Of a stretch of DNA of 64,000 nt, positions 5,346 to 27,987 are shown piece by piece. The number at the start of each line of letters is the position of its first letter. Within the stretch, counting starts at the first letter, position 1. Made by a program: the position numbers and the translations under genes. Where the stretch lies: positions 1 through 64,000 of the IMG/VR virus record IMGVR_UViG_3300042889_001272. One strand, written 5' to 3'. The notes beneath the pieces were generated by a model, which saw nothing but the letters and a program-made list of their open reading frames with translations, had not been told where the DNA came from and searched no databases.

Positions 5346-5948
5346 ATGCCCTCAGTATTTTTAACCAGCGACACGCACTTTGGACACACAGGTGTATGCC
5401 GTTTTACCCGTAACGACGGAGTTACAAAACTTCGACCATGGGACTCAGCAGAGGAAATGGACGAGGAAATGATTCGTCGTTGGAATGATACAGTTAGACC
5501 CAACGATAAAGTTTATCACTTGGGCGATGTTGTTATCAACCGTAAATCATTGAAAACTCTTGCTCGTCTAAACGGCGACAAAGTATTAATCCGCGGCAAC
5601 CACGACATCTTTCGAGATGACGAGTATCGAGAATACTTTCGAGAACTACGTGCTTACCATGTTATGAACGGGATGATCCTTAGCCATATTCCCGTACACA
5701 GTGACAGCTTGGGTCGTTTTGGCACTAACATTCACGGACACACCCACGCAAATCGTGTACGTAAGGCCCGTGGAGTCGATGCACGTACCGGAGAAATCTT
5801 ATACAGTGACGAACCGGATGTACGCTATCATTGTGTTTGTGTAGAGCAAACTGACTTTGCTCCTATTTTATTTGAAGATGTTATCAAACGTATTGAAGCA
5901 GAAGGCGGAAGTGTGGGATTTAAAAACGGAAATGGTTCTATAATGTGA
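5346..5948 (+). CDS. Calcineurin-like metallophosphoesterase
   Basis: SDTHFGH, HLGD, GNHD, H, HGHTH motifs. Confidence 0.9.
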   Translation: MPSVFLTSDTHFGHTGVCRFTRNDGVTKLRPWDSAEEMDEEMIRRWNDTVRPNDKVYHLGDVVINRKSLKTLARLNGDKVLIRGNHDIFRDDEYREYFRELRAYHVMNGMILSHIPVHSDSLGRFGTNIHGHTHANRVRKARGVDARTGEILYSDEPDVRYHCVCVEQTDFAPILFEDVIKRIEAEGGSVGFKNGNGSIM

Positions 5949-7110
5949 TTGTAGTATTGCTAAAATCAGATATAGCACCAATCTTGTACACTAATCTAAA
6001 AACTTTAAATCCAGTGCGAGGACCATTTAAATAAATAGGATCTATTTCTTTTATAAAATTTCTAAAGTCACTTACAATAAGATCAAAAGTTCTAGTGTTA
6101 TTGTGCATTTTGTAAAACCAATCATCGTGTTCGCCTAAAAACATGCGTGTGGGCTTATGTCCTTGGAATACTTTTCGGTGAGTCTGAGGATATATGCATG
6201 GTATAATAGCTCTTTCATAGAAACTATGCCTGGTTCTAGATTGTTCCAAAGACTGTATTGGCAATCTAAAATCAAGCATCTTTTCTTTAGCAAAACGGTT
6301 CTCTGGCATGTCTATCCATTTGGCTAATACATGCGCTTGCTTCACTTGCATTTCTGGCATTTCTGGGGCAAAATAAAATAATACATTTTCTACATTTGGA
6401 TACTTGTCCTTGAATGGAGGGCGTTGCACATTTACTGTAAGATCAGACATCATCACATTGACAGTATTATCTGTATCGTAGAACAGATGCGGCTTATCAA
6501 TGCCATACACTATAGCAATCTTCTTACCTTGTTCAGCTAACTGTTTGATATGCAACTGTTTGTCTAAATCATATCTTGCTCCGCTACTAGGATGTATCCA
6601 TTCGCCGCATCTAAAAATCCAGTCATCTGTTTCATAATTTAGTAATGTTTCAAAATAGTCGTTGATGGTGATTTTTACATCAGGATGCTTGCTGTGAATT
6701 TCGTGCATCAATGGCATCTGTGCCAGCATTGTTTCACTCATTGTATTACCAGCACTGGTATCTTTGTTGGTTTCAGTCCACTGTGATAAGCCACTGATAG
6801 GAGCACTGGCTACTACTTCATCAACTAATATACCGTTGTTCAAAAAGCTCCATATCACATTGGTGCTATCACCACCACCACTGCACAGGATCACTACATA
6901 ATCATATTGATCCCTGATCTGCTGTGCTCTAAGTTTGTAATACTGATCGAGACTGAGTTCCGGTTCAGTAGTCCAATCAGTGCGGCTATATATCTCATCA
7001 TTAAAATGCCATTCTATTTCTTCTTTAGTTAGACTCGCGTCAAGCACGGCAGCTAATTTATCAGAAAATACTTTATTTCCTACGGTGTAATATCCGGTGT
7101 TTGTTTTCAT
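5938..7110 (-). CDS. N-type ATP pyrophosphatase (Asn-synthetase-like) protein
   Basis: SGGGDS PP-loop after a beta-strand; no glutaminase domain. Confidence 0.65.
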   Translation of the reverse strand: MKTNTGYYTVGNKVFSDKLAAVLDASLTKEEIEWHFNDEIYSRTDWTTEPELSLDQYYKLRAQQIRDQYDYVVILCSGGGDSTNVIWSFLNNGILVDEVVASAPISGLSQWTETNKDTSAGNTMSETMLAQMPLMHEIHSKHPDVKITINDYFETLLNYETDDWIFRCGEWIHPSSGARYDLDKQLHIKQLAEQGKKIAIVYGIDKPHLFYDTDNTVNVMMSDLTVNVQRPPFKDKYPNVENVLFYFAPEMPEMQVKQAHVLAKWIDMPENRFAKEKMLDFRLPIQSLEQSRTRHSFYERAIIPCIYPQTHRKVFQGHKPTRMFLGEHDDWFYKMHNNTRTFDLIVSDFRNFIKEIDPIYLNGPRTGFKVFRLVYKIGAISDFSNTTITL

Positions 7111-8378
7111 TCTAAGTAACCTATGTCTTTTCGGTAAGTAAAGTTGTACATTTCAATATTTTCTAAAAACTTGTAAATTCTATCACTTGCTTCCATTCTT
7201 GTTGGTGCAGAACTAGTTATGACACTATTTAAAAGTTTCCTATCTTTATTAAAACTTATATGTATGTCAGGCAATTCCGGCCATAATTGAGGATTGTGGT
7301 GCGGCTCCAACTCTGCAGATCCGTACATGGCCTGAATATTTACGATATTATGATAATCAGAGTTTACGATTCGTAGACATACGGCTTGCTGATCATTATT
7401 TGACACTGGATCTATTTTTGCGCCAGTTGCGGCTTGGTATAACATATTTGAAATACTACACTTGCTGTCAAATGTCATGGCAATTGATTGAAATTCAGGG
7501 TCGCCTGGTCGGACGTTAATTTCAATCACATATACTTTGCCTTCCAAATCCTCCATAATGCCCAGATACAGAATCCCCACATAAGGAGTACCTTGTGATT
7601 TTAAGTAATTTAAAATAGTATCCGCATACTGATGCACTATGGGGTTAATATTAACTGGGGAATAACAACCCATGCTTGCAGTGTTGCTACCTGTGTCGCC
7701 TTCTCCGAACTTTTTATAATCTCTTGCAGAACCGAGATACTCCCAAGAATTCTCATTGCACAGTATGTGATAGGAATACTCACGTTTCCCGGTTATGAAT
7801 TCTTCTACTAGAAAATGCTGATCCAAGAACTGGCCGAACCCTTTCATATACCTGTTCTGCCCAAAAGATTGCAAATTTTCAAATTCTTTATTCACGTTAT
7901 CGTCGGTTATGATGACAGTCTGTAATCCTGCACGCCAGTCTCTTTCAAATTTTAATACCCATGGTCTGGGTATATTAAAAAATACTTCGAACAGTTTACT
8001 TTTATTATATACTCTGGATTTTGCAGTTGGAATATTCAGCTTTTGAAGTAAAGTCTTGCCATGAGCTTTACTCCATTCTAAGAATGATAAATCATAGCTC
8101 GGAGAGCAAGAAGGAATATTTTTTTCTTTTAGGAAATTCTGAAGACGTTGATTTTGTAGATAATTTATAGTAGTCAACCACACCAAATCCACTGGTGTAG
8201 TAGTCAGAAGGTCTATGATTTCGTCCACTGATTTTAGATCCAATGTGGAGTATCTTAATGAAGGTTGTATTGCAGGATTCGCTGTAATATGATAGATATG
8301 TTCTACTTCGTTTTCTTCTAATAATTTTTTAGAAAAAAAGTGTACCCCTGCGTGTGATCCAAATATTGCAATTTTCAT
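7107..8378 (-). CDS. PurD-like ATP-grasp ligase (diverged)
   Basis: LEWSK, EEFITGKREYS, RDYKKFGEGDTGSNTASMGCYSP, GILYLG, EINVRPGDPEFQ and YRKDIG match GAR synthetase motifs. Confidence 0.8.
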   Translation of the reverse strand: MKIAIFGSHAGVHFFSKKLLEENEVEHIYHITANPAIQPSLRYSTLDLKSVDEIIDLLTTTPVDLVWLTTINYLQNQRLQNFLKEKNIPSCSPSYDLSFLEWSKAHGKTLLQKLNIPTAKSRVYNKSKLFEVFFNIPRPWVLKFERDWRAGLQTVIITDDNVNKEFENLQSFGQNRYMKGFGQFLDQHFLVEEFITGKREYSYHILCNENSWEYLGSARDYKKFGEGDTGSNTASMGCYSPVNINPIVHQYADTILNYLKSQGTPYVGILYLGIMEDLEGKVYVIEINVRPGDPEFQSIAMTFDSKCSISNMLYQAATGAKIDPVSNNDQQAVCLRIVNSDYHNIVNIQAMYGSAELEPHHNPQLWPELPDIHISFNKDRKLLNSVITSSAPTRMEASDRIYKFLENIEMYNFTYRKDIGYLE

Positions 8379-8384
8379 AATGTT

Positions 8385-8442: not shown

Positions 8443-8739
8443 TTATTCGCCTAATAATTCAACGGTGTTTGTGATACCATTTGATTCATTGTGTCTTATT
8501 CGAGCTACGCTATTAGCGTTTGTCGAGCTCAGTCCTTTAATTTCAAGATAAGCAGCTTCGTCTCGAAATACATAGTTTCTAATAATAGAGTTGGCATTGA
8601 GTTTAGTTTTACTAACGCTCAATAAACCCGGCAAACTTTTAAACCAAGACGCCCATGCGGCATGACCCGCAGGATTTGCATCGCTAAACCATGCCGCATT
8701 GGCTGGCTTTACTGTTGTTACTCTTACTTTATATGACAT
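8443..8739 (-). CDS. Small hypothetical protein (98 aa)
   Basis: Strong SD aaggaga, Ala/Asn/Ser-rich, followed by the palindrome. Confidence 0.75.
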   Translation of the reverse strand: MSYKVRVTTVKPANAAWFSDANPAGHAAWASWFKSLPGLLSVSKTKLNANSIIRNYVFRDEAAYLEIKGLSSTNANSVARIRHNESNGITNTVELLGE

Positions 8740-8761: not shown

Positions 8762-9418
8762 TTATTTATCTAAGTACGTTCTATTTAGCATAGTATGATT
8801 GTGATCCGTAGGTCCCCAGTCGCCGTCTGGGTGAAAGGCAATAACGGTCATACTACTATCAGTAGTACAGAAACGATGTCTTTCTTGTTCAGTTAAACAA
8901 AAGCTAATGCCAGTAACAAGCTCGTCTTCCTTTAAGTTGCCACTATCGCCGTGATGACTAATACCTTTACCGTCTATGACACAGCCTAATCGGATGCTGG
9001 GATGAGTGTGATAAGACTGTGTGATGCCCGGCGGAAAGAACAATAGATTCAAACTAGCGTCTCCCAGCCTAGCAGGATATACCAGTAAACTATCACTACA
9101 ACCGTCAATATAAGTTAATCTGCCCTTGGATTCTACCCAGCCCATAGTATCTGGTACGATGTATCCTAGTCTAACGATTACAAATAGTTTGTCAACGACG
9201 TCGACACTAACAGAGTCTCTTACGCCTAATCCGAAATATTGCCCTTTTTCCAGTGTATGTTTTTTGCCATCAATTGTGATTGTGGCTGTGCCGTAGCTGT
9301 AACCATACACTGAGCAGAATTTACAGAAATCTGGGAACGTGAATTGCTGATTTTCAAACATGTAGCCAGCTGATGGGTACATACTATTGTACAATTCTAA
9401 TTTTTTTCCATCTATCAT
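8762..9418 (-). CDS. Cupin-domain protein
   Basis: HTHPSIRLG...G.G and ERHRF cupin motifs. Confidence 0.7.
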   Translation of the reverse strand: MIDGKKLELYNSMYPSAGYMFENQQFTFPDFCKFCSVYGYSYGTATITIDGKKHTLEKGQYFGLGVRDSVSVDVVDKLFVIVRLGYIVPDTMGWVESKGRLTYIDGCSDSLLVYPARLGDASLNLLFFPPGITQSYHTHPSIRLGCVIDGKGISHHGDSGNLKEDELVTGISFCLTEQERHRFCTTDSSMTVIAFHPDGDWGPTDHNHTMLNRTYLDK

Positions 9419-9438: not shown

Positions 9439-10350
9439 TTAAACAATATTTAGTTCTAAAAACCTTTTTGTAACACCGGTCTGTGATTTAAGGTGTGCTA
9501 TTAATTCTTTCCACGGAATAAAACACTGACGTTCTTTACGTACAGTACGAACTTCTTTGTACAGCCAATCAATGTTTTCATAGCCACTGAACTTTGGGAA
9601 ATATACCAGATCTTCTCTCCAGTGTTTGGCATACAGCATAGGTTTGATATAATATTCATAGCGCAATACATCATTAATTTTCATGTTATATAACTTAAAT
9701 CCGTTGCCATCGTAATAAACCCAACTGTCTAAAAAGTAATGAAACAAGTCATCATCGATACTGCTGAGGAAATATTCACTGCTATCTCCGAACATGACAA
9801 TCTTACCAGTACGCTCTATTGCATTAAGCGCACGATATCTAGCAATCTCCGGATCATAATAACTTTGATACACATAGTGATTGCCATCTTTTTTATTGGT
9901 TATTAACCACGGATCGTGTAGCACTTGTATTATATCATAGTCCTTGGGTAATTCACTGACAAATATGTGTTGAATGCAATGATTGGCATGTGCATCTAGT
10001 TCGGGCTTCAATGCTTCTATTTCATCTCTGCGAGTGTTGGGATTTATGTTTACAACATTGGCAGTAAATCCCCACTTCTTTTCCAGCATCTTTAAGTTTT
10101 CGTATTCATTTTCGTTGAAGCCATCTAATCTAAGAAAGCTACATTCAAGTGGAATACCCTGCTTTAGAAAACTTACCAGTGCTATTTGACTGTCTAAACC
10201 AGAACTTAGACACAGCATTATTTTGCCGGGATTGTTCAGATAAATGTCACGAGCACGTCTGTCTGATTCTTCTTTTAAATTACCAGCGGGTCTAGTACAG
10301 CTGGTGTGTTCTACGTAGAACTTATTATTCTCATCAAAACCCCAATGCAT
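9439..10350 (-). CDS. N-type ATP pyrophosphatase (Asn-synthetase-like) protein
   Basis: MLCLSSGLDS PP-loop; C-terminal PKFSGYE. Confidence 0.6.
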   Translation of the reverse strand: MHWGFDENNKFYVEHTSCTRPAGNLKEESDRRARDIYLNNPGKIMLCLSSGLDSQIALVSFLKQGIPLECSFLRLDGFNENEYENLKMLEKKWGFTANVVNINPNTRRDEIEALKPELDAHANHCIQHIFVSELPKDYDIIQVLHDPWLITNKKDGNHYVYQSYYDPEIARYRALNAIERTGKIVMFGDSSEYFLSSIDDDLFHYFLDSWVYYDGNGFKLYNMKINDVLRYEYYIKPMLYAKHWREDLVYFPKFSGYENIDWLYKEVRTVRKERQCFIPWKELIAHLKSQTGVTKRFLELNIV

Positions 10351-10352
10351 TG

Positions 10353-11375
10353 TTATCCTTGTATTGGTTGTTTAGTAAATCTGTAAACACCGTTGTCTTC
10401 GTAGATAAAGTCAAATGTATCTTTATAACGTAGCAATGCTGGCAAGCTAGGGTGCTTGGTTTTGTATTTAAAATATTGCAAGTCACCATCTACTTGATAG
10501 ATAAACTTCTTCATGATACCTTTATATTCGCCCCAGCTGGTTCCTTTGAAGTAATGACCTTCTTGTAGACTCCATTGTTGGAATGTATCTGTATTAAAGA
10601 AATGCTTTAAGTTTTTAATTAGTTGATTGCCCACTGCTTCGTTGTTGGCATGGCTTACTATGCGAAAGTTAACTGCCTGCCACTTTAAGTTAAAGTTCAA
10701 GTACCACAGCAAATCATGACAAGTAACCAATTCAACTGGGCTGGTTGAAATTTGTTGTTCTATAAATTCATATAGTTTTGGTTTTTCTTCTGTGGTTAAA
10801 TTTCTAGCCATCCAATCAACTGCCATTTGCAATGGCTTGTGAACAGTGCTAAAGTCATTGAAATAATCTACACAACTTTTCATAGTTAAACTGCCCACCA
10901 AGTTATCTGCCATTTCGCCTGTGATGATAACCTGATCCGGCTTGGGATCAGCAATAATCTTATCAGCTTGTACTACGCATGATATGAATCTATTTTTAAT
11001 AAATTTATTATAAAAGTTTGGATTTTCGCGGATACTGTCCATGTTCAATCCAATGGTCAATCTATTTTGTTTGTATAGTTCGTCGGCAATGCCAAGGTCA
11101 ACCATTAATGCAAAAATAAATGTACTGTCGATGCCGCCACTCCATAACACATTAACATGCATATTATGATCTGTTAATTCTTTAATTCTAGCAATGCTGG
11201 TTGCCATGAAGTCCGGACACGGTGTATCAACACTGGGCATGGGAAACATATTAACGTAATCGAAATTAGGCCAACGATTTGCGGTTCTGTCCAACACACT
11301 GATAAGTGGGTTGATTGTTTTATGAAAGACTTGTTTTTCTTTCAATGCTATGGGATGATAATAAACTAGATTCAT
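10353..11375 (-). CDS. Asparagine-synthetase-like ATP pyrophosphatase
   Basis: VLWSGGIDST, IITGEMADNLVG, HFF...FQQWS, YK...K..I. Confidence 0.75.
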   Translation of the reverse strand: MNLVYYHPIALKEKQVFHKTINPLISVLDRTANRWPNFDYVNMFPMPSVDTPCPDFMATSIARIKELTDHNMHVNVLWSGGIDSTFIFALMVDLGIADELYKQNRLTIGLNMDSIRENPNFYNKFIKNRFISCVVQADKIIADPKPDQVIITGEMADNLVGSLTMKSCVDYFNDFSTVHKPLQMAVDWMARNLTTEEKPKLYEFIEQQISTSPVELVTCHDLLWYLNFNLKWQAVNFRIVSHANNEAVGNQLIKNLKHFFNTDTFQQWSLQEGHYFKGTSWGEYKGIMKKFIYQVDGDLQYFKYKTKHPSLPALLRYKDTFDFIYEDNGVYRFTKQPIQG

Positions 11376-21382: not shown

Positions 21383-21388
21383 AATATC

Positions 21389-21976
21389 TTATTTTTCGAA
21401 TTTTTGTCTAATTGTATTAAAGTCATCATTAACAACTCGCAGACTGGCACACCATCTCGATGATGTAGTCTTTTGCATAACAATATTATGTAATACTGAC
21501 GTATCAACTAGACAGGGATTATTGTATGACACTTCTTGTATTTTAACACAATCTTCTGTGGCATACTTACGATATGTATAAGGCTTGATTGTTTCTCTAC
21601 CATCTTTGTCTAGCCATTTATAAGTTGAACTGACATCGATATATTTTTCAGGAGTTGCATACCAACGCATCACCCAAGGATCACATGGTAACAAAGTCCA
21701 GTTAATTGCCATACTTGCACGGCGAGCAGGATTATCGCCGACAGGGTCAAGACCATCTATATGTATGGGCACAGGTTTCCCCGGCGCTGTGTAGAATACT
21801 TGTATAACATTGTAGATTAATCCCATATTTTTAATTTCTAAAGCCAAGTCAGGCCTGCACATTTCAATAGGATATGTTATAAACTGATGATTTTCCCCTT
21901 GCGGTAACACGACACCGGGTATTAAAGGCCAATCTTTCCAGACAGCTTTTGTAATCTCATAATATAAACTTTTCAT
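21389..21976 (-). CDS. Fe(II)/2OG-dioxygenase-like protein
   Basis: IHID...AINW...LHNI...R...SLR. Confidence 0.7.
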   Translation of the reverse strand: MKSLYYEITKAVWKDWPLIPGVVLPQGENHQFITYPIEMCRPDLALEIKNMGLIYNVIQVFYTAPGKPVPIHIDGLDPVGDNPARRASMAINWTLLPCDPWVMRWYATPEKYIDVSSTYKWLDKDGRETIKPYTYRKYATEDCVKIQEVSYNNPCLVDTSVLHNIVMQKTTSSRWCASLRVVNDDFNTIRQKFEK

Positions 21977-22000: not shown

Positions 22001-23446
22001 TTAAATTGAATTTATTGTTATCAGGTACTTTTTTATAAATTCTTGTTTACGTCTGCGAAATTCGTCGCTGTTGTTGATTCGATCCTGATGCTGTGACATA
22101 ATTTCTTCATTGGTATATCCCAGTGTATGTAATGCTATGTGATTGAATCCTGCAAAGTTTAGACGTTTTCTCTGAGGATTTAATTTTTCAGCATAGGCCA
22201 GCACAGACTTTCGTTTCCAGGTGTCATTATACCATTGATTGTTTGAATCAAATTTAAAACCGTACTTGTCTGCATTGCGTTCGAATTCGCTGATATAACT
22301 TCGTTCATGTAGATTATTAGTGACCTGTAAGCCAAAGAATATCACATTTATCATGTGCTGATTCGCCCACAGTAAGCTACCTTGAAGATCATCTGCGGTT
22401 TCGCCTGGCAGTCCCACTATCAGTCCGCAATGAGCAGATATTTTATTTTTCCATATTTTATGAACTAGCTCTGGAACAAACTCACGGGCGCTTTTACCAC
22501 TCCAGCCCTTGCCTACAATTTTACTAGCAGTAGGATGTAGACTCTCTATGCCAAAGAATGCGCCGCGCAGTCCAGTCTCTGCCAGCTTGTCTGCCATGCC
22601 CTTGAATCTATGCACTAAGTCTGCTCTAATATAGGCTGCATATTCTATATTAAACGGCAAGCTTCTTGTGAGTTCTAAAAAGCTGTCTATCTTATATTCA
22701 CTGTCATTGAATGTGTCGTCCAGCATGATATAACTGGTAGTCTGCCACTTATTATAGTTGTTTTCTAGATATTTTTTTACAGAATCATTAGATTTTAAAT
22801 AATCAAATTTCTTTTTACCCAAATGGGGATACGCACAAAAACTACATTTGAAGATACAGCCTCGAGCAGTTTCCATAGGCAATACTTCGCCAGTCTGTAC
22901 ACAGTCTTCATCCTGCCACATAAAGTCACAACTTTGTATCTGGTAATTTTTGTTTATGGGATTTCTATAAGTCAGCTTATTCGTAGTGGGATTTATTTCA
23001 CGTTCAGGTTCTGATGCTTTTTTTGTCCAGTAATCCAGAACTTCCGCAAAAGTATCTTCACTTTCTCCTATGAACACACAGTCTATGTCTTCTATTCGTT
23101 TTCTCATATAACTACTGTGCGCTCCACCTAGTATTACTTTGATATCTGGATATTCTGCTTTGATTAGTTTTACCGCTTGATAGATGTTGGGAGGAATACC
23201 GTTGTCATATGTATAATAATGTTGTGACTCGTCGAACCAAAATGTACTACTCAGTGCCAAGCATATAGTATCAGCAGTGACAAAATTTTTAAATAGCTCC
23301 AGTAACTGAGTTGCAGTCCACTCTTGGCAAAAATCTATAACTCGACTGTTGTATCCTCGTTTTTTTAACTGATGTTTTAGTAGATAGGGACCTAACGCAC
23401 GTTGCGGAATAACTGAATAAATACTGTTTAGAAATATAACGTGCAT
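22001..23446 (-). CDS. B12-binding-domain radical SAM protein
   Basis: N-terminal Rossmann-like domain (VILGGAH, GESE), ETARGCIFKCSFC, DDTFN, FGIES, IVGLPGET. Confidence 0.88.
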   Translation of the reverse strand: MHVIFLNSIYSVIPQRALGPYLLKHQLKKRGYNSRVIDFCQEWTATQLLELFKNFVTADTICLALSSTFWFDESQHYYTYDNGIPPNIYQAVKLIKAEYPDIKVILGGAHSSYMRKRIEDIDCVFIGESEDTFAEVLDYWTKKASEPEREINPTTNKLTYRNPINKNYQIQSCDFMWQDEDCVQTGEVLPMETARGCIFKCSFCAYPHLGKKKFDYLKSNDSVKKYLENNYNKWQTTSYIMLDDTFNDSEYKIDSFLELTRSLPFNIEYAAYIRADLVHRFKGMADKLAETGLRGAFFGIESLHPTASKIVGKGWSGKSAREFVPELVHKIWKNKISAHCGLIVGLPGETADDLQGSLLWANQHMINVIFFGLQVTNNLHERSYISEFERNADKYGFKFDSNNQWYNDTWKRKSVLAYAEKLNPQRKRLNFAGFNHIALHTLGYTNEEIMSQHQDRINNSDEFRRRKQEFIKKYLITINSI

Positions 23447-23474: not shown

Positions 23475-24185
23475 ATGGAAACTTTAAATTATTGCTATCA
23501 CCAAAGTGACTTTAAATTCAGCGCAGAAGCTGAAAAATGGATACGTGATACTTATCACTATCCTTATTTAAATAAATTTGTAGCCTACGACAAGTATTCT
23601 ACTGCTAACAGCGAAAAAAATATTTTAAATAAAAAAATTACATGGCAAGGCACTAAGGCTTTGGAAGAACTTCGAGACTATTTGTCAAGTTGGGGGATTG
23701 CACGTGATTACGTTGGTAGTGAACTATGTGGCCCTGACGTTTTTATCAGTAACAGTCAGATACATGCACAACCTGGCTGGCCGCACATAGACGGACATAA
23801 ATGGGACAATATCAATCCCAATAAACGATTACCAGTATTAACACGGTTTAATGTGGTTATAGAATACAATCCAGATGATCCCATGCATTGGTGGGAGGAT
23901 GTAACTCCTGGGCATCCAATGGTTGGGCAAATCGATCATAATGTCAATGGCCATCGTAACAATCAATATCTTGCTATTAAAGGCGCAAACCATAAAGAAA
24001 AATGGAATAACCTAGGAACACCCAGTACGACAAAACACGGACTATATAAAAATCATTGCTCTGCATTTTTGCGGACAGACTGTGCTCATTGTCTAGATAT
24101 AAATAAACCAGGATTTAGATTGGTTGTTTCACTGGCATTAGACTGTACCCTAGAAGAATTATACAAACGTCGAGGCTTATTATAA
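23475..24185 (+). CDS. Fe(II)/2OG-dioxygenase-like protein
   Basis: PHID...RFNV...RTDCAH...R; ATAAATA 5 nt before the ATG. Confidence 0.6.
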   Translation: METLNYCYHQSDFKFSAEAEKWIRDTYHYPYLNKFVAYDKYSTANSEKNILNKKITWQGTKALEELRDYLSSWGIARDYVGSELCGPDVFISNSQIHAQPGWPHIDGHKWDNINPNKRLPVLTRFNVVIEYNPDDPMHWWEDVTPGHPMVGQIDHNVNGHRNNQYLAIKGANHKEKWNNLGTPSTTKHGLYKNHCSAFLRTDCAHCLDINKPGFRLVVSLALDCTLEELYKRRGLL

Positions 24186-25664
24186 ATTCAATAGCAGTTG
24201 TTTATAGTCATCAACATATTTTGCTTTACGCTTTAAAAAAGTACTATCTGTTAAAAAACCGTTGTGTGTGAGTTGACTACTTGTAATTTTCCATAGTTCT
24301 TCATCAGTATATCCAAATGCTCTGAGTTGAATATGAAACCAACAGCTGATACGTTTCAGTTTACGTTTGTAGTTTAAATCTTCCATGGCGAATTTTTGAG
24401 CTTTGTGATGTGTCCATAAGTCATTGTACCACCAACCCTTGTCGTCAAATTTATAACCGTACTGTTCTGCATTACGTTCAAACTCACTGTAGAAAGCTAC
24501 TCCGTCCATACTGCCTGCCATTAAACTTGCAGGACTACTGATTCCCAAGCCAAGCCAGAATGTCATGATATCGTTGTCATTGACCCAAGTCAATGTATCA
24601 CGTAGACTGTCGGCATCTTCGCCCGGTAAACCTGCAATAAACCCAGTAGTAACATTAACTCGATCTTTCCATATGTCGTGTAACAGATGCGGGATATATT
24701 CTTTGGCACTTTTACCACTCCATCCCTTTCCCACAGCCTGACTGGCAACAGGGTTTAAACTTTCTAAGCCAAAGAAACATGCTTCTAATCCAGTCTCTTG
24801 TAATTTTTCCGCCATACCATTAAACCTATGAACTAGGTCAGCACGTATATAAGCAACATATCCAATTTTGAATGGTAATGTTCTTGTCATGTCTAACAAT
24901 GTGTCTATTTTATATTCACTGTCATTAAACGTATCATCTAACATAATATAATGTGTAGTTCCCCAATTCTCGTAATTATGCATTAAATGATTACGGATAT
25001 GATCAATGGGTTTTAAGTAATCCATTTTCTTTTTACCCAAATGCGGATAACTACAAAATTTGCATTTAAAAATACAACCGCGAGCAGTTTCCATAGGCAA
25101 AGGTTCTCCGTGAACAATAGCATCTTGATTGCTCCACATAAAATCACATTTGCTTATATCATAATTTTTGTTTATACATTGACTGTAATACGGTTTGTTA
25201 ACTGTGTCATTTGTTTTCATTGGAGGCTCTTCTGTACCTTTGGTCCAATGATCTAATAACTCTATGAATAAATCTTCTGCTTCACCAATTACTAATGCAT
25301 CGACATGATCTACCTTGCTACCTACATTACGTATACCAGCTCCACCTAATACGATTTTAATATGTGGGAACTCTGCTTTAATTCTACGGCTAGCGATGTC
25401 CAGATTAGGAGGCATGCCTCCGTTGTTATCCCATATTTTTTGTTCGATATCACGCCAGAACGTTGTACTAAAACCCAAGCATATTGTAGTGTCATCGATG
25501 AAATGTTTAATCAATTCATACATTGTGTCTGCTGTAAATTCTTGACAATGATCTATCACTTGACAAGAATAATTATTTTTTTCAAGTACGTGTCTAAGCA
25601 AATATGGCCCAAGACTTCTACTGGGCATGATATCATAAATGCCGTTGATTAAAATTACATTCAT
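24180..25664 (-). CDS. B12-binding-domain radical SAM protein
   Basis: ETARGCIFKCKFC, DDTFN, FGLES, IAGLPGE; close paralogue of 22001-23446. Confidence 0.88.
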   Translation of the reverse strand: MNVILINGIYDIMPSRSLGPYLLRHVLEKNNYSCQVIDHCQEFTADTMYELIKHFIDDTTICLGFSTTFWRDIEQKIWDNNGGMPPNLDIASRRIKAEFPHIKIVLGGAGIRNVGSKVDHVDALVIGEAEDLFIELLDHWTKGTEEPPMKTNDTVNKPYYSQCINKNYDISKCDFMWSNQDAIVHGEPLPMETARGCIFKCKFCSYPHLGKKKMDYLKPIDHIRNHLMHNYENWGTTHYIMLDDTFNDSEYKIDTLLDMTRTLPFKIGYVAYIRADLVHRFNGMAEKLQETGLEACFFGLESLNPVASQAVGKGWSGKSAKEYIPHLLHDIWKDRVNVTTGFIAGLPGEDADSLRDTLTWVNDNDIMTFWLGLGISSPASLMAGSMDGVAFYSEFERNAEQYGYKFDDKGWWYNDLWTHHKAQKFAMEDLNYKRKLKRISCWFHIQLRAFGYTDEELWKITSSQLTHNGFLTDSTFLKRKAKYVDDYKQLLLNL

Positions 25665-26287
25665 ATGAGTTTTAATTTTTCTTTAAAGTCGTCTGTGAAT
25701 AACCCATCTAATCTAATACTCCATCTGAGTCCGGACTCGGCTAAAGTATAGTGTTCCACATAATTATTAAACCATGCAATATGTGCTGTTTGTACTTCAT
25801 TGACAAACAGTTTCTTTCCCATGGTGGGAGATGTTATCCATATGAATTCAGAATTTTTTCTATACTCTTCCGGTGCATTTTTTAAATCTTGATCCACGTG
25901 TTTTGGAGTATTGGAATTTTGCAACTGAATAAACACTATCTGCCTGCCTACTTGTTTGAAAATATTGCTGTCTTTGATCCATGTTTGTAACAAGAGAAAA
26001 TTTTCAATGTTAGCAGTAGGAGTCCAATGTTCTTCATGTCCCAACTTATACCATGCATCATGCCATGTATTTGCGGTAGTTAATAAAATGTCTAAACCTT
26101 TCAATGAATCGCCTGTGGTAATCGTTTTATGCCAAACTTGCTGCTCTGGTGTTAGGCCGGCTATGCTATGATTGTGTCCATAAAATATACTTGCTTTCTT
26201 TGCAGACTTGGCAATACCCAATGAGATTTCATCCCAGGGAAATAAAGTAGTGTCTATGATAGAAGTTAAATCGTAGACATCTTTCAT
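25661..26287 (-). CDS. Fe(II)/2OG-dioxygenase-like protein
   Basis: GRQIVF...KHVD...WFN...H...SIRLDG. Confidence 0.6.
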   Translation of the reverse strand: MKDVYDLTSIIDTTLFPWDEISLGIAKSAKKASIFYGHNHSIAGLTPEQQVWHKTITTGDSLKGLDILLTTANTWHDAWYKLGHEEHWTPTANIENFLLLQTWIKDSNIFKQVGRQIVFIQLQNSNTPKHVDQDLKNAPEEYRKNSEFIWITSPTMGKKLFVNEVQTAHIAWFNNYVEHYTLAESGLRWSIRLDGLFTDDFKEKLKLI

Positions 26288-26910
26288 TCTTTAATTAGTG
26301 GTGTAAATTTATCCAAAGCACCTTCCCATGAATGATTGAAATCTTCTTCAAAGAATCTAACACTTACTCCTACTCTGACAGTATTGGGATTATTAAAAAG
26401 AGTTGCATGTGGAATATCAGTTCTAACCAAAGTCGGGCCGTCTATAGTTGTTTGATCTAATAATTTTGCATTTTCGGGTATTCCCATTTTAAAACGTTCA
26501 CCAAAATGTATACCATTTAAATAATTAAATTTACTTTTATCAACTGGCTGTCCAACTGGCCAACATTCTTTAATTCCAGTCATGTCATACCAATAAAAAT
26601 CATTATGACTGCCTTCTATTTCCCAATTAACTCCTGCAACCAATTTACGCCAATTCTCTGGAACGTTATCATCATAAGCAATATCTGCGTGTATCATTCT
26701 ATTTTTTGGCGATGATGTACTGTCTCCGCGACCAAACAGCACCACCATCTTTGGACGCAATCCGATATTTTTAAAAATATCCAATACCTCGGATGTCAAA
26801 ACTTCATTGGGTAAAACAATATTGTATCCAGCAGTGATAGCACGTTGTGTTACTTCTTTGCTGTTCTTCAAAGGATTAATCGGCAAATTTAATTTTTTAA
26901 AATATGACAT
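26284..26910 (-). CDS. Fe(II)/2OG-dioxygenase-like protein
   Basis: IHAD...GVNW...PTLVRTDIPH...R...SVRF. Confidence 0.7.
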   Translation of the reverse strand: MSYFKKLNLPINPLKNSKEVTQRAITAGYNIVLPNEVLTSEVLDIFKNIGLRPKMVVLFGRGDSTSSPKNRMIHADIAYDDNVPENWRKLVAGVNWEIEGSHNDFYWYDMTGIKECWPVGQPVDKSKFNYLNGIHFGERFKMGIPENAKLLDQTTIDGPTLVRTDIPHATLFNNPNTVRVGVSVRFFEEDFNHSWEGALDKFTPLIKE

Positions 26911-26974
26911 AAATGTATTCTAGTTACAGTTATTTATATTTCATAATGTTAAATAAAGCACAACCGAGGAATAT

Positions 26975-27337
26975 ATGGACTACTGGGGTTATCATTTAAT
27001 TTTAGACTGTGGACAATGTGATCCTGCAAAGATGTCGGATTACGACAATGTTGATGTTTGGATTCGTAAACTTGTTAAAGACATTGACATGCAACCAATT
27101 GGCGAACCACGCATCGAATACACTGCCGCAGAGTTTCCTGATAAAGCAGGCTTTACTGTAGTGCAAGTGATTGTAACTAGTTCAATTGTTGCTCACTTTG
27201 TTGATGGTCTGGGGCAAATTTATTTAGATGTTTTTTCATGTAAACCGTTTGATCTCGCCGTAGTTGAGCAAAGCATGAAAGAACATTTCGGCTGTGCTAA
27301 GAGTAGGAAATACTTTTTAACTAGACAAGCAGATTAA
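26975..27337 (+). CDS. speD: S-adenosylmethionine decarboxylase proenzyme (SpeD/SpeH-like)
   Basis: GYHLILD, GFTVVQVIVTSSIVAHF, YLDVFSCKPF. Confidence 0.8.
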   Translation: MDYWGYHLILDCGQCDPAKMSDYDNVDVWIRKLVKDIDMQPIGEPRIEYTAAEFPDKAGFTVVQVIVTSSIVAHFVDGLGQIYLDVFSCKPFDLAVVEQSMKEHFGCAKSRKYFLTRQAD

Positions 27338-27987
27338 ACTAACGTTAAGAAATCTACGACCAAATGTGTTCTAGGACTTGTGCCGTTGTTTTGTACTGAA
27401 TGCCGCATTAAATTATTAAAAATAAAACATTCTCCTAGATCAAAATGACGCTTTTCGCCATTGCACGTTATGTAGCTTTCGTTATTTGTTTCTAATACTA
27501 AATGAACTCTAGTAGTTTCTTCTACAAGTCGATGGCCATCTATATGACTTTTAATTTGTGTATTTGATGGCAGTGTGTTGATTTCCACTCCGTGTGTATA
27601 ATATTGTCGCTGATTGTAATTGTTCAATGCTGCCATCATTTTTGTAGCCAATGGCATAATTAGATCTCGTACATTACGACTAAACTCCATGCGTTCAATG
27701 CTGTTATCAAGTCCAAGATGCCAAAACAAGCCGGCCCAATTGGCATCAGTGTTTTCTTCAGGATTGATACAGCCATTTGCCAATCGTATATATTTAGATT
27801 CAGCGAAGTCGGCTCTTCCTTTGATGTTCGGAGTCAGTAAATGTTGTACTGCCGGATCAGTTATGTATGCTAAAAGATTGTTTATTTCTTCTTTTGCAAT
27901 ATCAACGGTCAATGACTGGAAAGGAACGTCTAGTTTGACATTGGATTTCAAATAATTGAGCGTTTTAAATAATAGTCCAAATTCCAT
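27334..27987 (-). CDS. AspH/beta-hydroxylase-like dioxygenase
   Basis: HID...RVHLVLETN...G...FNN...HSVQN.G...RTHLVVD. Confidence 0.8.
   Translation of the reverse strand: MEFGLLFKTLNYLKSNVKLDVPFQSLTVDIAKEEINNLLAYITDPAVQHLLTPNIKGRADFAESKYIRLANGCINPEENTDANWAGLFWHLGLDNSIERMEFSRNVRDLIMPLATKMMAALNNYNQRQYYTHGVEINTLPSNTQIKSHIDGHRLVEETTRVHLVLETNNESYITCNGEKRHFDLGECFIFNNLMRHSVQNNGTSPRTHLVVDFLTLV

What the first reader, a model, noticed from the sequence alone, without database searches (positions are those of the whole stretch)
5938..27987. Phage-encoded 22-kb tailoring/biosynthetic island with no obvious scaffold enzyme
Seen: between two tRNA arrays lies a near-continuous run of tailoring enzymes. 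It holds 4 PP-loop ATP pyrophosphatases, a PurD-like ATP-grasp, a cupin, a desaturase, 2 GNAT-like proteins, a TauD-like dioxygenase, about 14 small HxD/H dioxygenase-like proteins, 2 B12-type radical SAMs and a SAM decarboxylase. The 5938-17553 part is one tightly coupled minus-strand run headed by TATAAATA. Known: amide-forming, oxidising and radical-methylating families together are typical of secondary-metabolite or macromolecule-modification clusters. Inference: this is an uncharacterised late-expressed phage pathway. It may decorate virion proteins (e.g. the collagen-like fibre), modify host envelope lipids or tRNAs, or make a small molecule.
Basis: partly seen in the sequence, partly recalled or inferred. 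Interest (0 to 1): 0.88.

Follow-up and report, generated by a model that had tools for sequence, protein, structure and literature searches.

The report
Phage island of oxygenases and amide ligases
A large uncultured water phage related to T4-like cyanophages carries a real, co-regulated 22-kb block of about 29 tailoring enzymes whose families travel together in many related phages. It is a bigger, new version of the already known "many dioxygenases in a row" clusters of cyanophages, and its product is still unknown.

Summary
Window 5938-27987 lies between two tRNA arrays and encodes 29 genes. They are 14 small HxD...H...R double-stranded beta-helix (DSBH) oxygenase-like proteins (13 intact), a TauD-like protein, a cupin and four PP-loop proteins (three canonical motifs). 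There are also a PurD-like ATP-grasp, a Delta9-type membrane desaturase, two B12-radical SAM paralogs, one supported and one weak GNAT-like protein, and a divergent AdoMetDC-like protein.

Co-occurrence is conserved. Two relatives are syntenic. Among 38 distinct gene layouts around homologs of the 5938 PP-loop protein in IMG/VR, desaturases (22), the 13335 PP-loop family (22), DSBH proteins (14), GNAT-like proteins (12) and B12-rSAMs (10) recur in shuffled order.

The island is modular, not one linear pathway. The ATP-grasp/5938/cupin module and a three-oxygenase block are absent from one relative. More paralogs lie outside the stated coordinates (about 22 DSBH genes and 3 desaturases in 64 kb).

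TATAAATA heads the operons (8 of 13 copies lie 4-20 nt before a start codon). "Late" expression is not shown.

The most likely function is ATP-dependent amide ligases working without an NRPS, plus oxygenases, desaturases and C-methylases, that tailor a fatty-acyl or amino-acid-derived small molecule or envelope lipid. This is an inference. Dioxygenase arrays in T4-like cyanophages have been known since 2010, so this is a new variant of a known kind.

The parts
5938..7110 (-). PP-loop ATP pyrophosphatase, '5938 family': phage-specific, no Pfam model
   Evidence: SGGGDS motif; S77, G78, G79, D81 and S82 are invariant in 38 sequences. The AF2 model (pLDDT 93) gives only weak PP-loop hits in the PDB. 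There are 458 metagenome homologs and at least 513 IMG/VR loci. A motif scan of GTDB genomes found none.
7107..8378 (-). PurD-like ATP-grasp ligase, below the PurD equivalog cutoff
   Evidence: GARS_A E 1.8e-26. PDB PurD E 3.9e-26. TIGR00877 scores 150.7 bits against a 288 cutoff. It is adjacent to a 5938-family gene in the window, L019, L022 and L023.
8443..8739 (-). 98-aa fast-evolving small protein of unknown function
   Evidence: 43% identical in L019 and 30% in L022, although the flanking enzymes are 64-95% identical. The C-terminus is not conserved.
8762..9418 (-). Cupin-domain protein
   Evidence: Pfam Cupin_2 E 2.1e-6. It recurs next to 5938-family genes in 5 architectures.
9439..10350 (-). 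PP-loop protein, a paralog of 13335
   Evidence: SSGLDS motif. 32% identical to 13335 over 117 aa. It is a member of alignment A3, which hits TtuA and NadE.
10353..11375 (-). PP-loop protein, '10353 family'
   Evidence: SGGIDS motif, invariant in alignment A4. Homologs lie next to 5938-family genes in L021 and L023, and next to a B12-rSAM in the bacterial locus L024.
11372..11914 (-). 180-aa protein of unknown function
   Evidence: Conserved only in close relatives.
11889..12734 (-). Membrane fatty-acid desaturase with Delta9-type His boxes
   Evidence: FA_desaturase E 3.1e-11. His boxes HRIVSH / HRGSHH / WHNNHH. Three hydrophobic segments.
12736..13350 (-). GNAT-fold protein, '12736 family'
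   Evidence: Sits between the 13335-type PP-loop gene and the desaturase in window, L012, L016, L017 and L018; in a sixth contig (L011) the family member lies next to desaturases without the PP-loop gene. A 48-sequence profile hits 11 PDB chains, 9 named acetyltransferases, best E 2.6e-4. About 500 representative clusters.
13335..14258 (-). PP-loop-like protein, '13335 family'; the motif here is degenerate (SGGWES)
   Evidence: It co-occurs with desaturases in 22 of 38 architectures.
14264..14863 (-). Second, weakly GNAT-like protein
   Evidence: Pfam Acetyltransf_7 E 0.005. It recurs beside the PP13335 family and a desaturase in L104, L111 and L125.
14865..15761 (-). TauD-family Fe(II)/2OG oxygenase
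   Evidence: TauD E 1.7e-16. WHVD intact. The best named relative is ScoE, weakly.
15751..17553 (-). Three AspH-like DSBH paralogs: 15751 catalytically dead, 16349 and 16930 intact
   Evidence: Asp_Arg_Hydrox E 1.1e-4 for 16930. Alignment A11 shows H-x-D...R-x-H-x-P-L...H, and shows the triad lost in 15751 and in its L012 ortholog.
17559..17589 (.). Divergent TATAAATA pair that heads the minus-strand 15-gene run and the plus-strand run 17595-19653
17568..19653 (+). Three DSBH oxygenase-like genes: 17568/17595 (AspH-like), 18326 and 18895
   Evidence: Motifs seen by eye. Alignments A5 and A11. AF2 model of 18326, pLDDT 89.5, DSBH fold.
19650..21976 (-). Four small DSBH paralogs: 19650, 20230, 20789 and 21389. 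The last three are absent from relative L002/L012.
22001..23446 (-). B12-binding radical SAM enzyme
   Evidence: Radical_SAM E 1.7e-14 and B12-binding E 8.2e-10. C197, C201 and C204 invariant. The best NCBIfam hit is the lipid-type TIGR04072, 92.5 bits against a 360 cutoff.
23475..24185 (+). 236-aa DSBH-like protein (PHID...AHCL...FRL)
   Evidence: Motifs by eye. 72% identical ortholog in L002.
24180..25664 (-). Second B12-binding radical SAM enzyme, 50% identical to the first
25661..26910 (-). Two DSBH-like paralogs: 25661 and 26284
26975..27337 (+). AdoMetDC-fold (pyruvoyl decarboxylase-like) protein, divergent
   Evidence: AdoMet_dc E 1.3e-14. NCBIfam 30 bits against a 75.65 cutoff. 82.5% identical in L002 and L016.
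27334..27987 (-). Aspartyl/asparaginyl beta-hydroxylase-family oxygenase
   Evidence: Asp_Arg_Hydrox E 2.2e-17. Weak LpxO hit, E 0.0016.
2476..4138 (.). Three more DSBH paralogs outside the stated region: 2476(-), 3051(+) and 3587(-), with a divergent TATAAATA pair at 3028-3045
35514..41171 (.). Second cluster outside the region: two desaturase paralogs (35514, 36290), the x37033 and x37617 unknown proteins, and DSBH-like proteins at 38470, 39192, 39800 and 40656

Best explanation
The block is a genuine, selected accessory enzyme island of an uncultured phage related to T4-like cyanomyophages. It is an enlarged relative of the tandem dioxygenase clusters already known in cyanomyophages. It consists of several separable, separately transcribed modules, not one linear pathway:
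(a) PP-loop(5938) + PurD-like ATP-grasp (+ cupin + 98-aa protein);
(b) PP-loop(13335/9439/10353) + GNAT-fold proteins + Delta9-type membrane desaturase + TauD + AspH-like oxygenases;
(c) arrays of small DSBH Fe(II)/2OG oxygenase paralogs;
(d) duplicated B12-radical SAM enzymes;
(e) an AdoMetDC-like decarboxylase.

Proposed working (inferred). The PP-loop enzymes activate carboxylates as acyl-adenylates, and the ATP-grasp activates them as acyl-phosphates. The GNAT-fold proteins transfer acyl groups. Together they form amide bonds without an NRPS, so they are the missing "scaffold" makers. They act on a fatty-acyl or amino-acid (possibly polyamine) derived molecule taken from the host. The membrane desaturases introduce double bonds into the lipophilic part. 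The many oxygenases hydroxylate it, and the B12-rSAMs methylate unactivated carbons. The product would be a modified lipoamino-acid-like or aminolipid-like envelope component, or a small metabolite, made during infection. Genes elsewhere in the window could supply cofactors: SufB for Fe-S clusters and a dicarboxylate symporter-like protein for 2OG or succinate.

Shown: the family assignments, the intact catalytic motifs, the operon structure, the shared upstream motif and the conserved co-occurrence.
Inferred: the substrate, the order of steps and the timing of expression.
For: Real and intact:
- Family hits and motifs.
- High-confidence models of a DSBH fold and a PP-loop fold.

Co-regulated:
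- A 15-gene translationally coupled run.
- 8 of 13 TATAAATA copies lie 4-20 nt upstream of start codons of island operons (p 3.5e-12).

Selected together:
- Relative L002/L012 is syntenic over 9439-27987 at 44-85% amino-acid identity.
- L019 is syntenic over 5938-16359.
- Around 5938-family genes in IMG/VR there are 38 distinct architectures. They contain desaturase (22), PP13335 (22), DSBH (14), GNAT-like (12), B12-rSAM (10), AspH-like (9), ATP-grasp (7), cupin (5) and PP10353 (5), with shuffled order and variable copy number.
- The PP13335 - GNAT-fold - desaturase order recurs in five divergent contigs.

Modular:
- L012 lacks module (a) and the 20230-21976 trio.
- L022 has only module (a).

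Small-molecule, amide-ligase reading:
- The nearest cellular homologs of the B12-rSAM sit next to PP-loop amide synthetases. These are two 10353-family genes in a Burkholderiales MAG, and an AsnB-type asparagine synthase in both Enhygromyxa salina strains, with an AMP-binding enzyme and a weak JmjC match in one of them (L026).
- A 373-kb phage places a 5938 homolog among ACP, AMP-ligase, BKACE, SDR, GNAT and carbamoyltransferase genes.

Lipophilic component:
- Desaturases with three His boxes and hydrophobic segments, present in 3 copies here and in at least 8 in L113.
- The best rSAM model is a lipid-type B12-rSAM.
- The best TauD relative, ScoE, acts on an amino-fatty acid.

Literature:
- Dioxygenase arrays in Syn9 and jumbo cyanophages have been interpreted as peptide-, amino-acid- or sugar-derived metabolite or capsule tailoring (PMC2938197, PMC7824862).
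Against: - No substrate is identified. There is no carrier protein, NRPS, PKS, precursor peptide or glycosyltransferase in the island.
- All similarities that might indicate a substrate (lipid-type rSAM, ScoE, LpxO, polyamine acetyltransferases) are far below family cutoffs.
- Only the desaturase has predicted membrane segments.
- Viral Delta9 desaturases already have a simpler known role, membrane fluidity (PMC5776448). They may only share a permissive insertion region with the rest.
- Co-occurrence in a clade can partly reflect common descent of a hyperplastic region rather than functional coupling.
- The closest solved structures to the small DSBH proteins are protein hydroxylases (NO66/MINA53), which favours a protein target.
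Confidence: 0.42

Rival explanations
1. Post-translational modification of proteins: virion proteins such as the collagen-like fibre, or host proteins such as ribosomal proteins. The DSBH/AspH-like paralogs would each hydroxylate a different residue or site. The ATP-grasp, PP-loop and GNAT enzymes would add or amidate amino-acyl groups. The B12-rSAMs would C-methylate side chains.
For: - The best solved-structure matches of the small DSBH model are the ribosomal protein hydroxylases NO66/MINA53 (E 4e-4).
- Several paralogs belong to the Asp/Asn beta-hydroxylase family.
- The window encodes a fibre with 64 G-X-Y triplets, rich in Asp at X and Lys at Y.
- B12-rSAM models for RiPP C-methyltransferases also match (ApyD 53.7 bits, rSAM_ocin_1 50.4 bits).
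- The literature links beta-hydroxylase operons to collagen-like and tail-collar proteins (PMC2938197).
- The TATAAATA sites lack a -35 element, like T4 late promoters.
Against: - The structural matches are weak (TM about 0.43).
- The fibre gene is 22 kb away and is not preceded by the motif.
- Membrane desaturases and a TauD enzyme do not fit a protein substrate.
- There is no precursor-peptide gene and no room for one, since the intergenic gaps are at most 64 nt.
Confidence: 0.2
2. A collection of independent auxiliary metabolic genes in a hyperplastic, tRNA-flanked region. The desaturases would serve membrane fluidity and the speD-like gene polyamines. The many 2OG oxygenases would manipulate 2-oxoglutarate or nitrogen-status signalling, or repair damage. 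There would be no common product.
For: - T4-like cyanomyophages and pelagimyophages are known to collect 2OG-Fe(II) oxygenases, speD/speH, desaturases, AspH and radical SAM cassettes in hypervariable regions near tRNAs (PMC3037559, PMC7029224).
- Modules come and go between relatives.
- Paralogs are scattered over at least 40 kb of the window.
Against: - Translational coupling of 15 genes.
- A shared upstream motif restricted to these operons.
- Persistent linkage of novel PP-loop families with desaturase, GNAT and rSAM genes across contigs only 25-50% identical and rearranged.
- The same PP-loop + B12-rSAM pairing in bacteria.
Confidence: 0.17
3. Tailoring of a sugar or glycan: a capsule, LPS or flagellin-type glycan, or a nucleotide-sugar such as a nonulosonic acid. 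This would alter the host surface or decorate the virion.
For: - In a Burkholderiales MAG, two 10353-family PP-loop genes and the closest B12-rSAM homolog lie in a flagellar locus beside FliP, a sigma factor and a TPR protein.
- A 373-kb phage places a 5938 homolog beside UDP-glucose dehydrogenase, carbamoyltransferase and an SDR/epimerase.
- The jumbo cyanophage cluster was interpreted as capsule decoration (PMC7824862).
- Pelagimyophage islands carry glycosyltransferases (PMC7029224).
Against: - Pfam, PHROG and NCBIfam scans found no glycosyltransferase or nucleotide-sugar enzyme in the island. The surrounding window was only sampled (about 30 of its other ORFs were scanned) and showed none.
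- The flagellar context is a single MAG.
Confidence: 0.09
4. Hypermodification of nucleic acids: phage DNA bases, or the 20 phage tRNAs. PP-loop enzymes would adenylate base positions, the PurD-like ligase would add an amino acid, and the oxygenases would oxidise methyl groups.
For: - Many PP-loop enzymes act on nucleobases. TtuA, MnmA and QueC are among the hits of the A3 profile.
- PurD acts on a ribose-phosphate amine.
- The island is flanked by tRNA arrays and by an RNA-repair-like kinase/phosphatase trio.
- T4-like phages commonly hypermodify DNA (general knowledge).
Against: - The similarity is limited to the generic ATP-binding loop.
- AlkB-type structures rank below JmjC types, with TM at most 0.35.
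- No base-exchange, hydroxymethylase or DNA glycosyltransferase genes were seen.
- The desaturases are unexplained.
Confidence: 0.08

Closest known systems
Tandem dioxygenase gene arrays of T4-like cyanomyophages, for example the Synechococcus phage Syn9 cluster of 10 dioxygenases including the MINA/No66-like gp49 (Iyer et al. 2010, PMC2938197). Related: the multiple ~190-aa 2OG-Fe(II) oxygenase genes per cyanomyophage genome (Sullivan et al. 2010, PMC3037559).
   Same: - The phage lineage is related.
- Many small Fe(II)/2OG oxygenase genes from several families lie in tandem in a variable region near tRNAs.
- The nearest solved structures are of the MINA/NO66 type.
- The function is unproven in both.
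   Different: - The small oxygenases here have no detectable sequence match in 50,697 isolate phage records.
- The array is larger: 14 in 22 kb and about 22 in 64 kb.
- It is embedded with four PP-loop proteins, an ATP-grasp, desaturases and B12-rSAMs.
- No tryptophan halogenase was found here.
[quoted passage not shown] 2021, PMC7824862).
   Same: - A multi-enzyme tailoring cluster without NRPS or PKS in large cyanophage-like genomes.
- It includes 2OG oxygenases and a cupin.
- A relative (L021) combines a 5938 homolog with a carbamoyltransferase.
   Different: - The defining carbamoyltransferase, halogenase and HAD phosphatase were not found in this island.
- PP-loop, ATP-grasp, desaturase and B12-rSAM components are not part of that description.
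Hypervariable 'host recognition cluster' and accessory regions of pelagimyophages (Zaragoza-Solas et al. 2020, PMC7029224).
   Same: - Radical SAM cassettes gained and lost between close relatives.
- AspH as a recurrent gene.
- speH, a stearoyl-CoA desaturase and a 2OGFeDO in freshwater members.
   Different: - Those islands are defined by tail fibres and glycosyltransferases, which are absent from 5938-27987.
- No PP-loop or ATP-grasp association is reported there.
Cyanophage-encoded Delta9 lipid desaturases, vFAD (Roitman et al. 2018, PMC5776448).
   Same: A membrane desaturase with DesC-type histidine boxes, carried by T4-like aquatic phages.
   Different: - Here the desaturase is multi-copy: 3 in the window and at least 8 in L113.
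- It is operon-linked to PP-loop and GNAT-fold genes.
- Sequence identity to known DesA/DesC models is low (62.9 bits against a 400 cutoff).
- Activity was not tested.
NRPS-independent amide-ligase pathways of bacteria: ATP-grasp and asparagine-synthetase/beta-lactam-synthetase-type PP-loop ligases in small-molecule biosynthesis (family knowledge). The closest example found here is the Enhygromyxa salina locus with B12-rSAM + AsnB-type synthase in both strains, plus AMP-binding and a weak JmjC match in one.
   Same: - The same combination of enzyme superfamilies: PP-loop amide synthetase, B12-rSAM and JmjC/DSBH.
- Carbapenam synthetase is the top fold hit of the 5938 model.
   Different: - The fold hit is weak (E 2e-3, TM 0.33).
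- The phage PP-loop proteins lack the glutaminase domain.
- They belong to families not found in the cellular genomes scanned.
- No product is known for either locus.

Membership tests
PP-loop ATP pyrophosphatase (adenine nucleotide alpha-hydrolase) superfamily | SGGxDS pyrophosphate-binding loop at the start of a Rossmann-like domain | tested here: met
   The motifs are SGGGDS (5938), SGGIDS (10353), SSGLDS (9439) and the degenerate SGGWES (13335). The motif is invariant in the family alignments.
PP-loop ATP pyrophosphatase (adenine nucleotide alpha-hydrolase) superfamily | Detectable sequence or structure homology to known members | tested here: met
   The A3 profile hits TtuA, NadE, MnmA and QueC (E 4e-6). 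A2 and A3 align by hhalign at 95.8%. The 5938 model hits carbapenam synthetase, GMPS, LarE and TtuA, but weakly (E >= 2e-3) and only over about 160 residues.
PP-loop ATP pyrophosphatase (adenine nucleotide alpha-hydrolase) superfamily | Membership of a named functional family (QueC, TilS, AsnB, NadE, WbuX and others) | tested here: not met
   There are no Pfam or NCBIfam hits above cutoff. The best is the argG-related model at 15.9 bits against a 425 cutoff.
Fe(II)/2-oxoglutarate oxygenases (DSBH fold) | HxD/E...H metal triad plus a basic residue for the 2OG C5 carboxylate | tested here: met
   H78, D80, H151 and R160 are invariant in 20 sequences. The AspH-like group has HxD...RxHxPL...H. 13 of the 14 proteins in the region are intact. 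15751 is not.
Fe(II)/2-oxoglutarate oxygenases (DSBH fold) | Double-stranded beta-helix fold | tested here: met
   The AF2 model has pLDDT 89.5 and is all-beta. Foldseek hits NO66/MINA53, YxbC, ABH2 and PHYHD1.
Fe(II)/2-oxoglutarate oxygenases (DSBH fold) | 2OG-dependent turnover | not testable with these tools
   Needs an enzyme assay.
Phosphoribosylamine-glycine ligase (PurD) | Score above the equivalog cutoff of TIGR00877, with N, A and C domains | tested here: not met
   The match is full-length (1-421 of 425), but scores 150.7 bits against a 288 cutoff. GARS_N and GARS_C are below the Pfam cutoffs. It therefore has the PurD fold but is probably not a PurD.
Class B (cobalamin-dependent) radical SAM enzymes | N-terminal B12-binding domain plus a CxxxCxxC radical SAM core | tested here: met
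   PF02310 and PF04055 are above cutoff for 22001. CIFKC[SK]FC is invariant. For 24180 the B12 domain is below cutoff, but the protein is 50% identical to 22001.
Class B (cobalamin-dependent) radical SAM enzymes | Assignment to a characterised subfamily (lipid-type TIGR04072, PhpK, RiPP methylases, HpnR and others) | tested here: not met
   All hits are far below cutoff. The best is 92.5 bits against 360.
Membrane fatty-acid desaturase (Delta9 / DesC-like) | Three histidine boxes and membrane-spanning segments | tested here: met
   HRIVSH, HRGSHH and WHNNHH, plus hydrophobic segments at 9-55 and 154-185. PF00487 is above cutoff.
Membrane fatty-acid desaturase (Delta9 / DesC-like) | Regiospecific Delta9 activity on acyl-lipids | not testable with these tools
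   The NCBIfam DesA-family model scores 62.9 bits against a 400 cutoff. Needs expression in a desaturase-deficient laboratory yeast or E. coli strain.
GNAT acyltransferases | GNAT fold detectable by profile | tested here: met
   This holds for the 12736 family only. The A12 profile hits 11 PDB chains, 9 named acetyltransferases and 2 unnamed or prophage proteins, best E 2.6e-4. For 14264 the result is inconclusive (Pfam E 0.005).
S-adenosylmethionine decarboxylase (SpeD/SpeH) | Equivalog-level score and the conserved processing/active-site motif | tested here: inconclusive
   Pfam AdoMet_dc scores 54.8 bits (above cutoff), but TIGR03330 scores 30 bits against 75.65. The region around the expected Ser reads VTSSIVAHFVDG. 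The substrate could be something other than SAM.
Cyanomyophage tandem-dioxygenase cluster (Syn9 type) | Tandem array of several dioxygenase families in a T4-like aquatic phage | tested here: met
   with PMC2938197.
Cyanomyophage tandem-dioxygenase cluster (Syn9 type) | Orthology of the members to the Syn9/P-SSM2 genes | tested here: not met
   tblastn of 18326 against isolate phages found nothing. Structural matches to cyanophage 2OG oxygenases are weak (TM 0.4-0.45).

The most novel reading that the evidence does not exclude
A large uncultured clade of phages related to T4-like cyanomyophages encodes a previously unrecognised pathway that works without NRPS or PKS. Three phage-specific PP-loop amide-ligase families act with a PurD-derived ATP-grasp, GNAT-fold acyltransferases, arrays of Delta9-type desaturases, B12-radical SAM methylases and dozens of diversified Fe(II)/2OG oxygenases. 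Together they make a new class of polyunsaturated, hydroxylated, methylated lipoamino-acid-like or aminolipid-like molecule during infection, either to remodel the envelope or as a bioactive metabolite.
Probability: 0.25. Interest if true: 0.85.

Novelty: new variant of a known kind. Interest (0 to 1): 0.62.

Why it matters
Dioxygenase-rich islands of T4-like cyanophages and pelagiphages have been listed for 15 years without a known product.

This work defines a recurrent and much broader gene set:
- three PP-loop families with no Pfam model, one of them present in at least 513 IMG/VR loci;
- a PurD-derived ligase;
- multi-copy desaturases;
- B12-radical SAM enzymes.

It also defines a compact 15-gene operon that can be expressed as a unit. 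That turns a vague class of "AMGs of unknown function" into a concrete biochemical question.

If the product is a modified envelope lipid or a small metabolite, it would be a new way for abundant aquatic phages to reprogram host chemistry. It would also be a source of new amide-ligase and C-H-functionalising enzymes.

Tried and rejected
- Megablast of the whole region against isolate phages found nothing. tblastn of the rSAM, the 5938 protein, a small oxygenase and x37617 also found nothing. The lineage has no cultured close relative.
- PHROG scans of the unknown proteins gave only a marginal QueC-like hit, E 8e-4.
- PDB profile searches with the 5938 family (A2) and the small DSBH family (A5) gave no meaningful sequence hits. 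Only fold comparison placed them.
- I tested whether the 98-aa ORF is a LysW-like carrier or substrate with a conserved C-terminal Glu. The C-termini differ (GE, SD, A), so I rejected this.
- I tested whether the ~180-aa gene after the desaturase is conserved across distant phages. It is not.
- I asked whether x37617 is a functional partner of the 5938 family. It is adjacent in many loci. But it is a hugely abundant, more conserved family (at least 7999 homologs), so it may only be a lineage core gene. This is left open.
- A genome-contig scan with the A3 alignment failed for lack of a conserved stretch. The scan with A8 found no cellular homolog.
- TATAAATA is not enriched overall: 13 copies against 8.5 expected, with 9 of 100 shuffles reaching 13 or more. 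Only its position is significant.
- A look-up of the SufB ORF to extend the contig failed because there was no exact match.
- I rejected a bona fide PurD or SpeD annotation because both score below the equivalog cutoffs.

Full report
ORIGIN AND SETTING

The window is the first 64 kb of IMGVR_UViG_3300042889_001272, a 235,561-bp viral contig. ARAGORN finds 9 tRNAs at 345-2472 and 11 at 28437-35483. GC content is 33-38% across the island.

No isolate phage shares DNA with the region. A 551-aa virion-type protein (48723-50378) has homologs only in T4-like cyanomyophages, at 27-36% identity. A distant relative that carries the same modules (L023) encodes a T4-type replisome: gp43, gp44, gp45, the clamp-loader subunit (Phage_clamp_A) and RegA. 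The phage therefore appears to belong to an uncultured lineage related to T4-like cyanomyophages and pelagimyophages. The T4-type replication genes were seen only in the relative L023, not in this window.

THE OBSERVATION

Region 5938-27987 holds 29 ORFs with almost no spacer DNA.

Pfam, NCBIfam and PDB searches confirm these assignments:
- A full-length PurD-like ATP-grasp. It scores below the PurD equivalog cutoff, 150.7 bits against 288.
- A cupin.
- A membrane desaturase with His boxes HRIVSH / HRGSHH / WHNNHH and hydrophobic segments.
- A TauD-family oxygenase with WHVD intact.
- Two B12-binding radical SAM paralogs, 50% identical, both with CxxxCxxC.
- An AdoMet_dc-family protein that fails the SpeD equivalog cutoff.

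The four PP-loop calls have no Pfam support, but they are right at superfamily level:
- The motifs are SGGGDS, SSGLDS, SGGIDS and a degenerate SGGWES.
- A profile of the 13335/9439 family hits TtuA, NAD synthetase, MnmA and QueC (E 4e-6).
- The 5938 family aligns to that family over the loop (hhalign 95.8%).
- Its AlphaFold model (pLDDT 93.2) finds only PP-loop domains in the PDB. The matches are weak and cover about 160 of 390 residues.

The count of "about 14" small oxygenases is exact: 15751, 16349, 16930, 17568, 18326, 18895, 19650, 20230, 20789, 21389, 23475, 25661, 26284 and 27334.
- In a 20-sequence alignment, H, D, H and R are invariant.
- The AspH-like subgroup shows HxD...RxHxPL...H.
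- The model of 18326 (pLDDT 89.5) is a double-stranded beta-helix. Its best solved relatives are the ribosomal oxygenases NO66/MINA53 (E 4e-4, TM about 0.43). Its best viral relatives are uncharacterised proteins of uncultured phages (TM 0.82).
- Only 15751 has lost the metal ligands, and so has its ortholog in a relative.

Of the two GNAT calls, the 12736 family is supported by a 48-sequence profile that hits 11 PDB chains. Nine are named acetyltransferases and the other two are an unnamed protein and a prophage protein (best E 2.6e-4). 14264 remains weak.

OPERONS AND THE TATAAATA MOTIF

Region 5938-17553 is 15 minus-strand genes separated by -26 to +64 nt.

TATAAATA is not enriched overall: 13 copies against 8.5 expected. 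But 8 of the 13 copies lie 4-20 nt upstream of a start codon in the right orientation (binomial p 3.5e-12). All eight head oxygenase or rSAM operons: 2476, 3051, 16930, 17595, 21389, 22001, 26284 and 27334. The copy at 17582 suggests that the plus-strand gene starts at ATG 17595, not at 17568.

These sites have no -35 element. By contrast, perfect sigma-70 promoters precede the second tRNA array, at 28025 and 28118. This fits T4-type late promoters (TATAAAT is cited in PMC3037559). However, the 4-8 nt distance to the ATG is unusually short, and the motif was not seen before the fibre genes in this window. "Late" therefore remains unproven. "Co-regulated" is the safe statement.

IS IT CHANCE ACCUMULATION?

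No.
- One relative (L002/L012, a 141.7-kb contig) keeps the genes from 9439 to 27987 in the same order at 44-85% amino-acid identity.
- Another (L019, a 161.7-kb contig) keeps 5938-16359.

The 5938 family has 458 metagenome homologs, all unnamed, and at least 513 loci in IMG/VR. In the 77 fetched loci I found 38 distinct architectures. They contained:
- desaturases in 22;
- the 13335/9439 PP-loop family in 22;
- small DSBH proteins in 14;
- the GNAT-fold family in 12;
- B12-rSAMs in 10;
- AspH-like proteins in 9;
- the ATP-grasp in 7;
- the cupin in 5;
- the 10353 family in 5.

Gene order is shuffled and copy numbers vary: up to four tandem 5938 paralogs, and at least eight desaturases in L113. 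The order PP-loop(13335) - GNAT-fold - desaturase recurs in five divergent contigs. The 5938 / PurD-like pair is adjacent in four genomes down to 46% identity.

IS IT ONE PATHWAY?

Probably not.
- L012 lacks 5938-9418 and the 20230-21976 trio, yet keeps everything else.
- L022 has only the ATP-grasp/5938 pair.
- B12-rSAMs occur alone in other phages.
- In this window, further DSBH paralogs lie at 2476, 3051, 3587, 32813, 38470, 39192, 39800 and 40656. Two more desaturases, with two conserved unknown proteins, lie at 35514-38246, outside the stated coordinates.

The island is best seen as a set of modules.

WHAT DOES IT DO?

No tool gives a substrate. These clues bear on it.

1. The only enzymes with a confident substrate class are the membrane desaturases, which act on lipophilic chains. 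Viral Delta9 desaturases are experimentally known (PMC5776448).

2. The nearest cellular relatives of the B12-rSAM lie beside PP-loop amide synthetases. In a Burkholderiales MAG these are two 10353-family genes, inside a flagellar locus. In both Enhygromyxa salina strains the neighbours are an AsnB-type asparagine synthase and a DUF3050/haem-oxygenase-like protein. One strain also has an AMP-binding enzyme, a weak JmjC match (E 9.5e-4, below the Pfam cutoff) and a PAD-type deiminase. The pairing of a PP-loop ligase with a B12-rSAM is therefore older than the phage context, and there it looks like small-molecule biosynthesis.

3. A 373-kb phage places a 5938 homolog among ACP, AMP-ligase, BKACE, SDR, GNAT, UDP-glucose dehydrogenase and carbamoyltransferase genes.

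4. Weak best hits point to lipid-type B12-rSAMs, ScoE, LpxO and polyamine acetyltransferases. All are far below family cutoffs.

5. Prior work read the cyanophage dioxygenase arrays as tailoring of peptide-, amino-acid- or sugar-derived metabolites (PMC2938197, PMC7824862).

I therefore favour, at about 0.4, amide-ligase chemistry that works without an NRPS: four PP-loop proteins, the ATP-grasp and the GNAT-fold proteins. It would act on a fatty-acyl or amino-acid-derived molecule, and the desaturases, oxygenases and C-methylases would decorate it. The "missing scaffold enzyme" would be the ligases themselves.

RIVALS

- Protein modification (0.2). It is supported by the NO66/MINA53 and AspH affinities and by a fibre with 64 G-X-Y triplets rich in Asp and Lys.
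- Unlinked auxiliary metabolic genes in a hyperplastic region (0.17).
- Glycan tailoring (0.09).
- Nucleic-acid hypermodification (0.08).

NOVELTY

The kind of feature is known: tandem dioxygenase arrays and radical SAM, desaturase, speD and AspH cassettes in the variable regions of T4-like aquatic phages (PMC2938197, PMC3037559, PMC7029224, PMC7824862).

New here are:
- the scale of the array;
- three phage-specific PP-loop families without any Pfam model, one of which was also absent from a motif scan of 185,579 species genomes;
- their conserved linkage with a PurD-derived ligase, multi-copy desaturases and B12-rSAMs.

I rate this a new variant of a known kind.

Noticed in passing
window 3028-3045, 17559-17589, 21985-21992, 23451-23458, 26931-26938, 27993-28000: TATAAATA lies only 4-8 nt (once 20 nt) upstream of the start codons of oxygenase and rSAM operons, often as divergent pairs, and has no -35 element. 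The spacing is too short for an ordinary leader with a ribosome-binding site. It suggests leaderless mRNAs, or a combined transcription and translation signal.
   Followed up: partly
window 61651-63111 and 53486-54763: There is a phage SufB (60% identical to the sufB of Microcystis phage MaAM05). There is also a Na+/dicarboxylate symporter-like protein (23-25% identical to GltT/DctA). Both are plausible cofactor or co-substrate support for three radical SAM enzymes and about 22 2OG oxygenases (Fe-S clusters; 2OG or succinate).
   Followed up: partly
window 4205-5948: A dual-specificity phosphatase (CX5R), an AAA_33 P-loop kinase and a metallophosphoesterase lie in a row beside the first tRNA array. 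The set looks like RNA/tRNA end-healing. It is conserved in relative L019.
   Followed up: partly
window 37617-38246 (with 37033-37674): A ~190-aa protein belongs to a very abundant, well conserved family: at least 7999 metagenome homologs at 45-97% identity. It has no Pfam, PDB or isolate-phage match. It is often the gene directly upstream of 5938-family PP-loop genes in other phages.
   Followed up: partly
window 15751-16359 and L012:6377-6994: An AspH-like paralog has lost the HxD...H metal ligands in both genomes, yet is conserved at 45% identity inside the operon. It may be a non-catalytic subunit or a substrate-binding partner.
   Followed up: partly
window 26975-27337; L002:6084-6443; L016:19161-19520: The AdoMetDC-like protein is 82.5% identical between phages whose neighbouring genes are only 25-50% identical. 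Its active-site region departs from the SpeD consensus. It is either under unusually strong constraint or was recently exchanged.
   Followed up: no
L024:4376-9467 (Burkholderiales MAG DASRFB010000023.1): In a bacterial flagellar locus (FliP, a sigma factor, a TPR protein) lie two homologs of the phage 10353 PP-loop family, a 497-aa unknown protein, and the closest cellular homolog (35%) of the phage B12-rSAM. It could be a flagellin or glycan modification island.
   Followed up: partly
window 50391-51392: The collagen-like tail-fibre protein has 64 G-X-Y triplets. Pro and Asp are frequent at X, and Lys and Thr at Y (GDKGDIGDTGPK repeats). It is a conceivable substrate for Asp or Lys hydroxylases.
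   Followed up: partly
window 28025-28146: Two near-perfect sigma-70 promoters (TTGACA-17-TATAAT and TTGACA-17-TACAAT) lie just upstream of the second tRNA array. The tRNAs and the enzyme island therefore appear to use different promoter types.
   Followed up: no
window 1441-2391: A third, small radical SAM protein (CNFKCNYC) lies inside the first tRNA array. Homologs sit near B12-rSAMs in L003 and L053.
   Followed up: no
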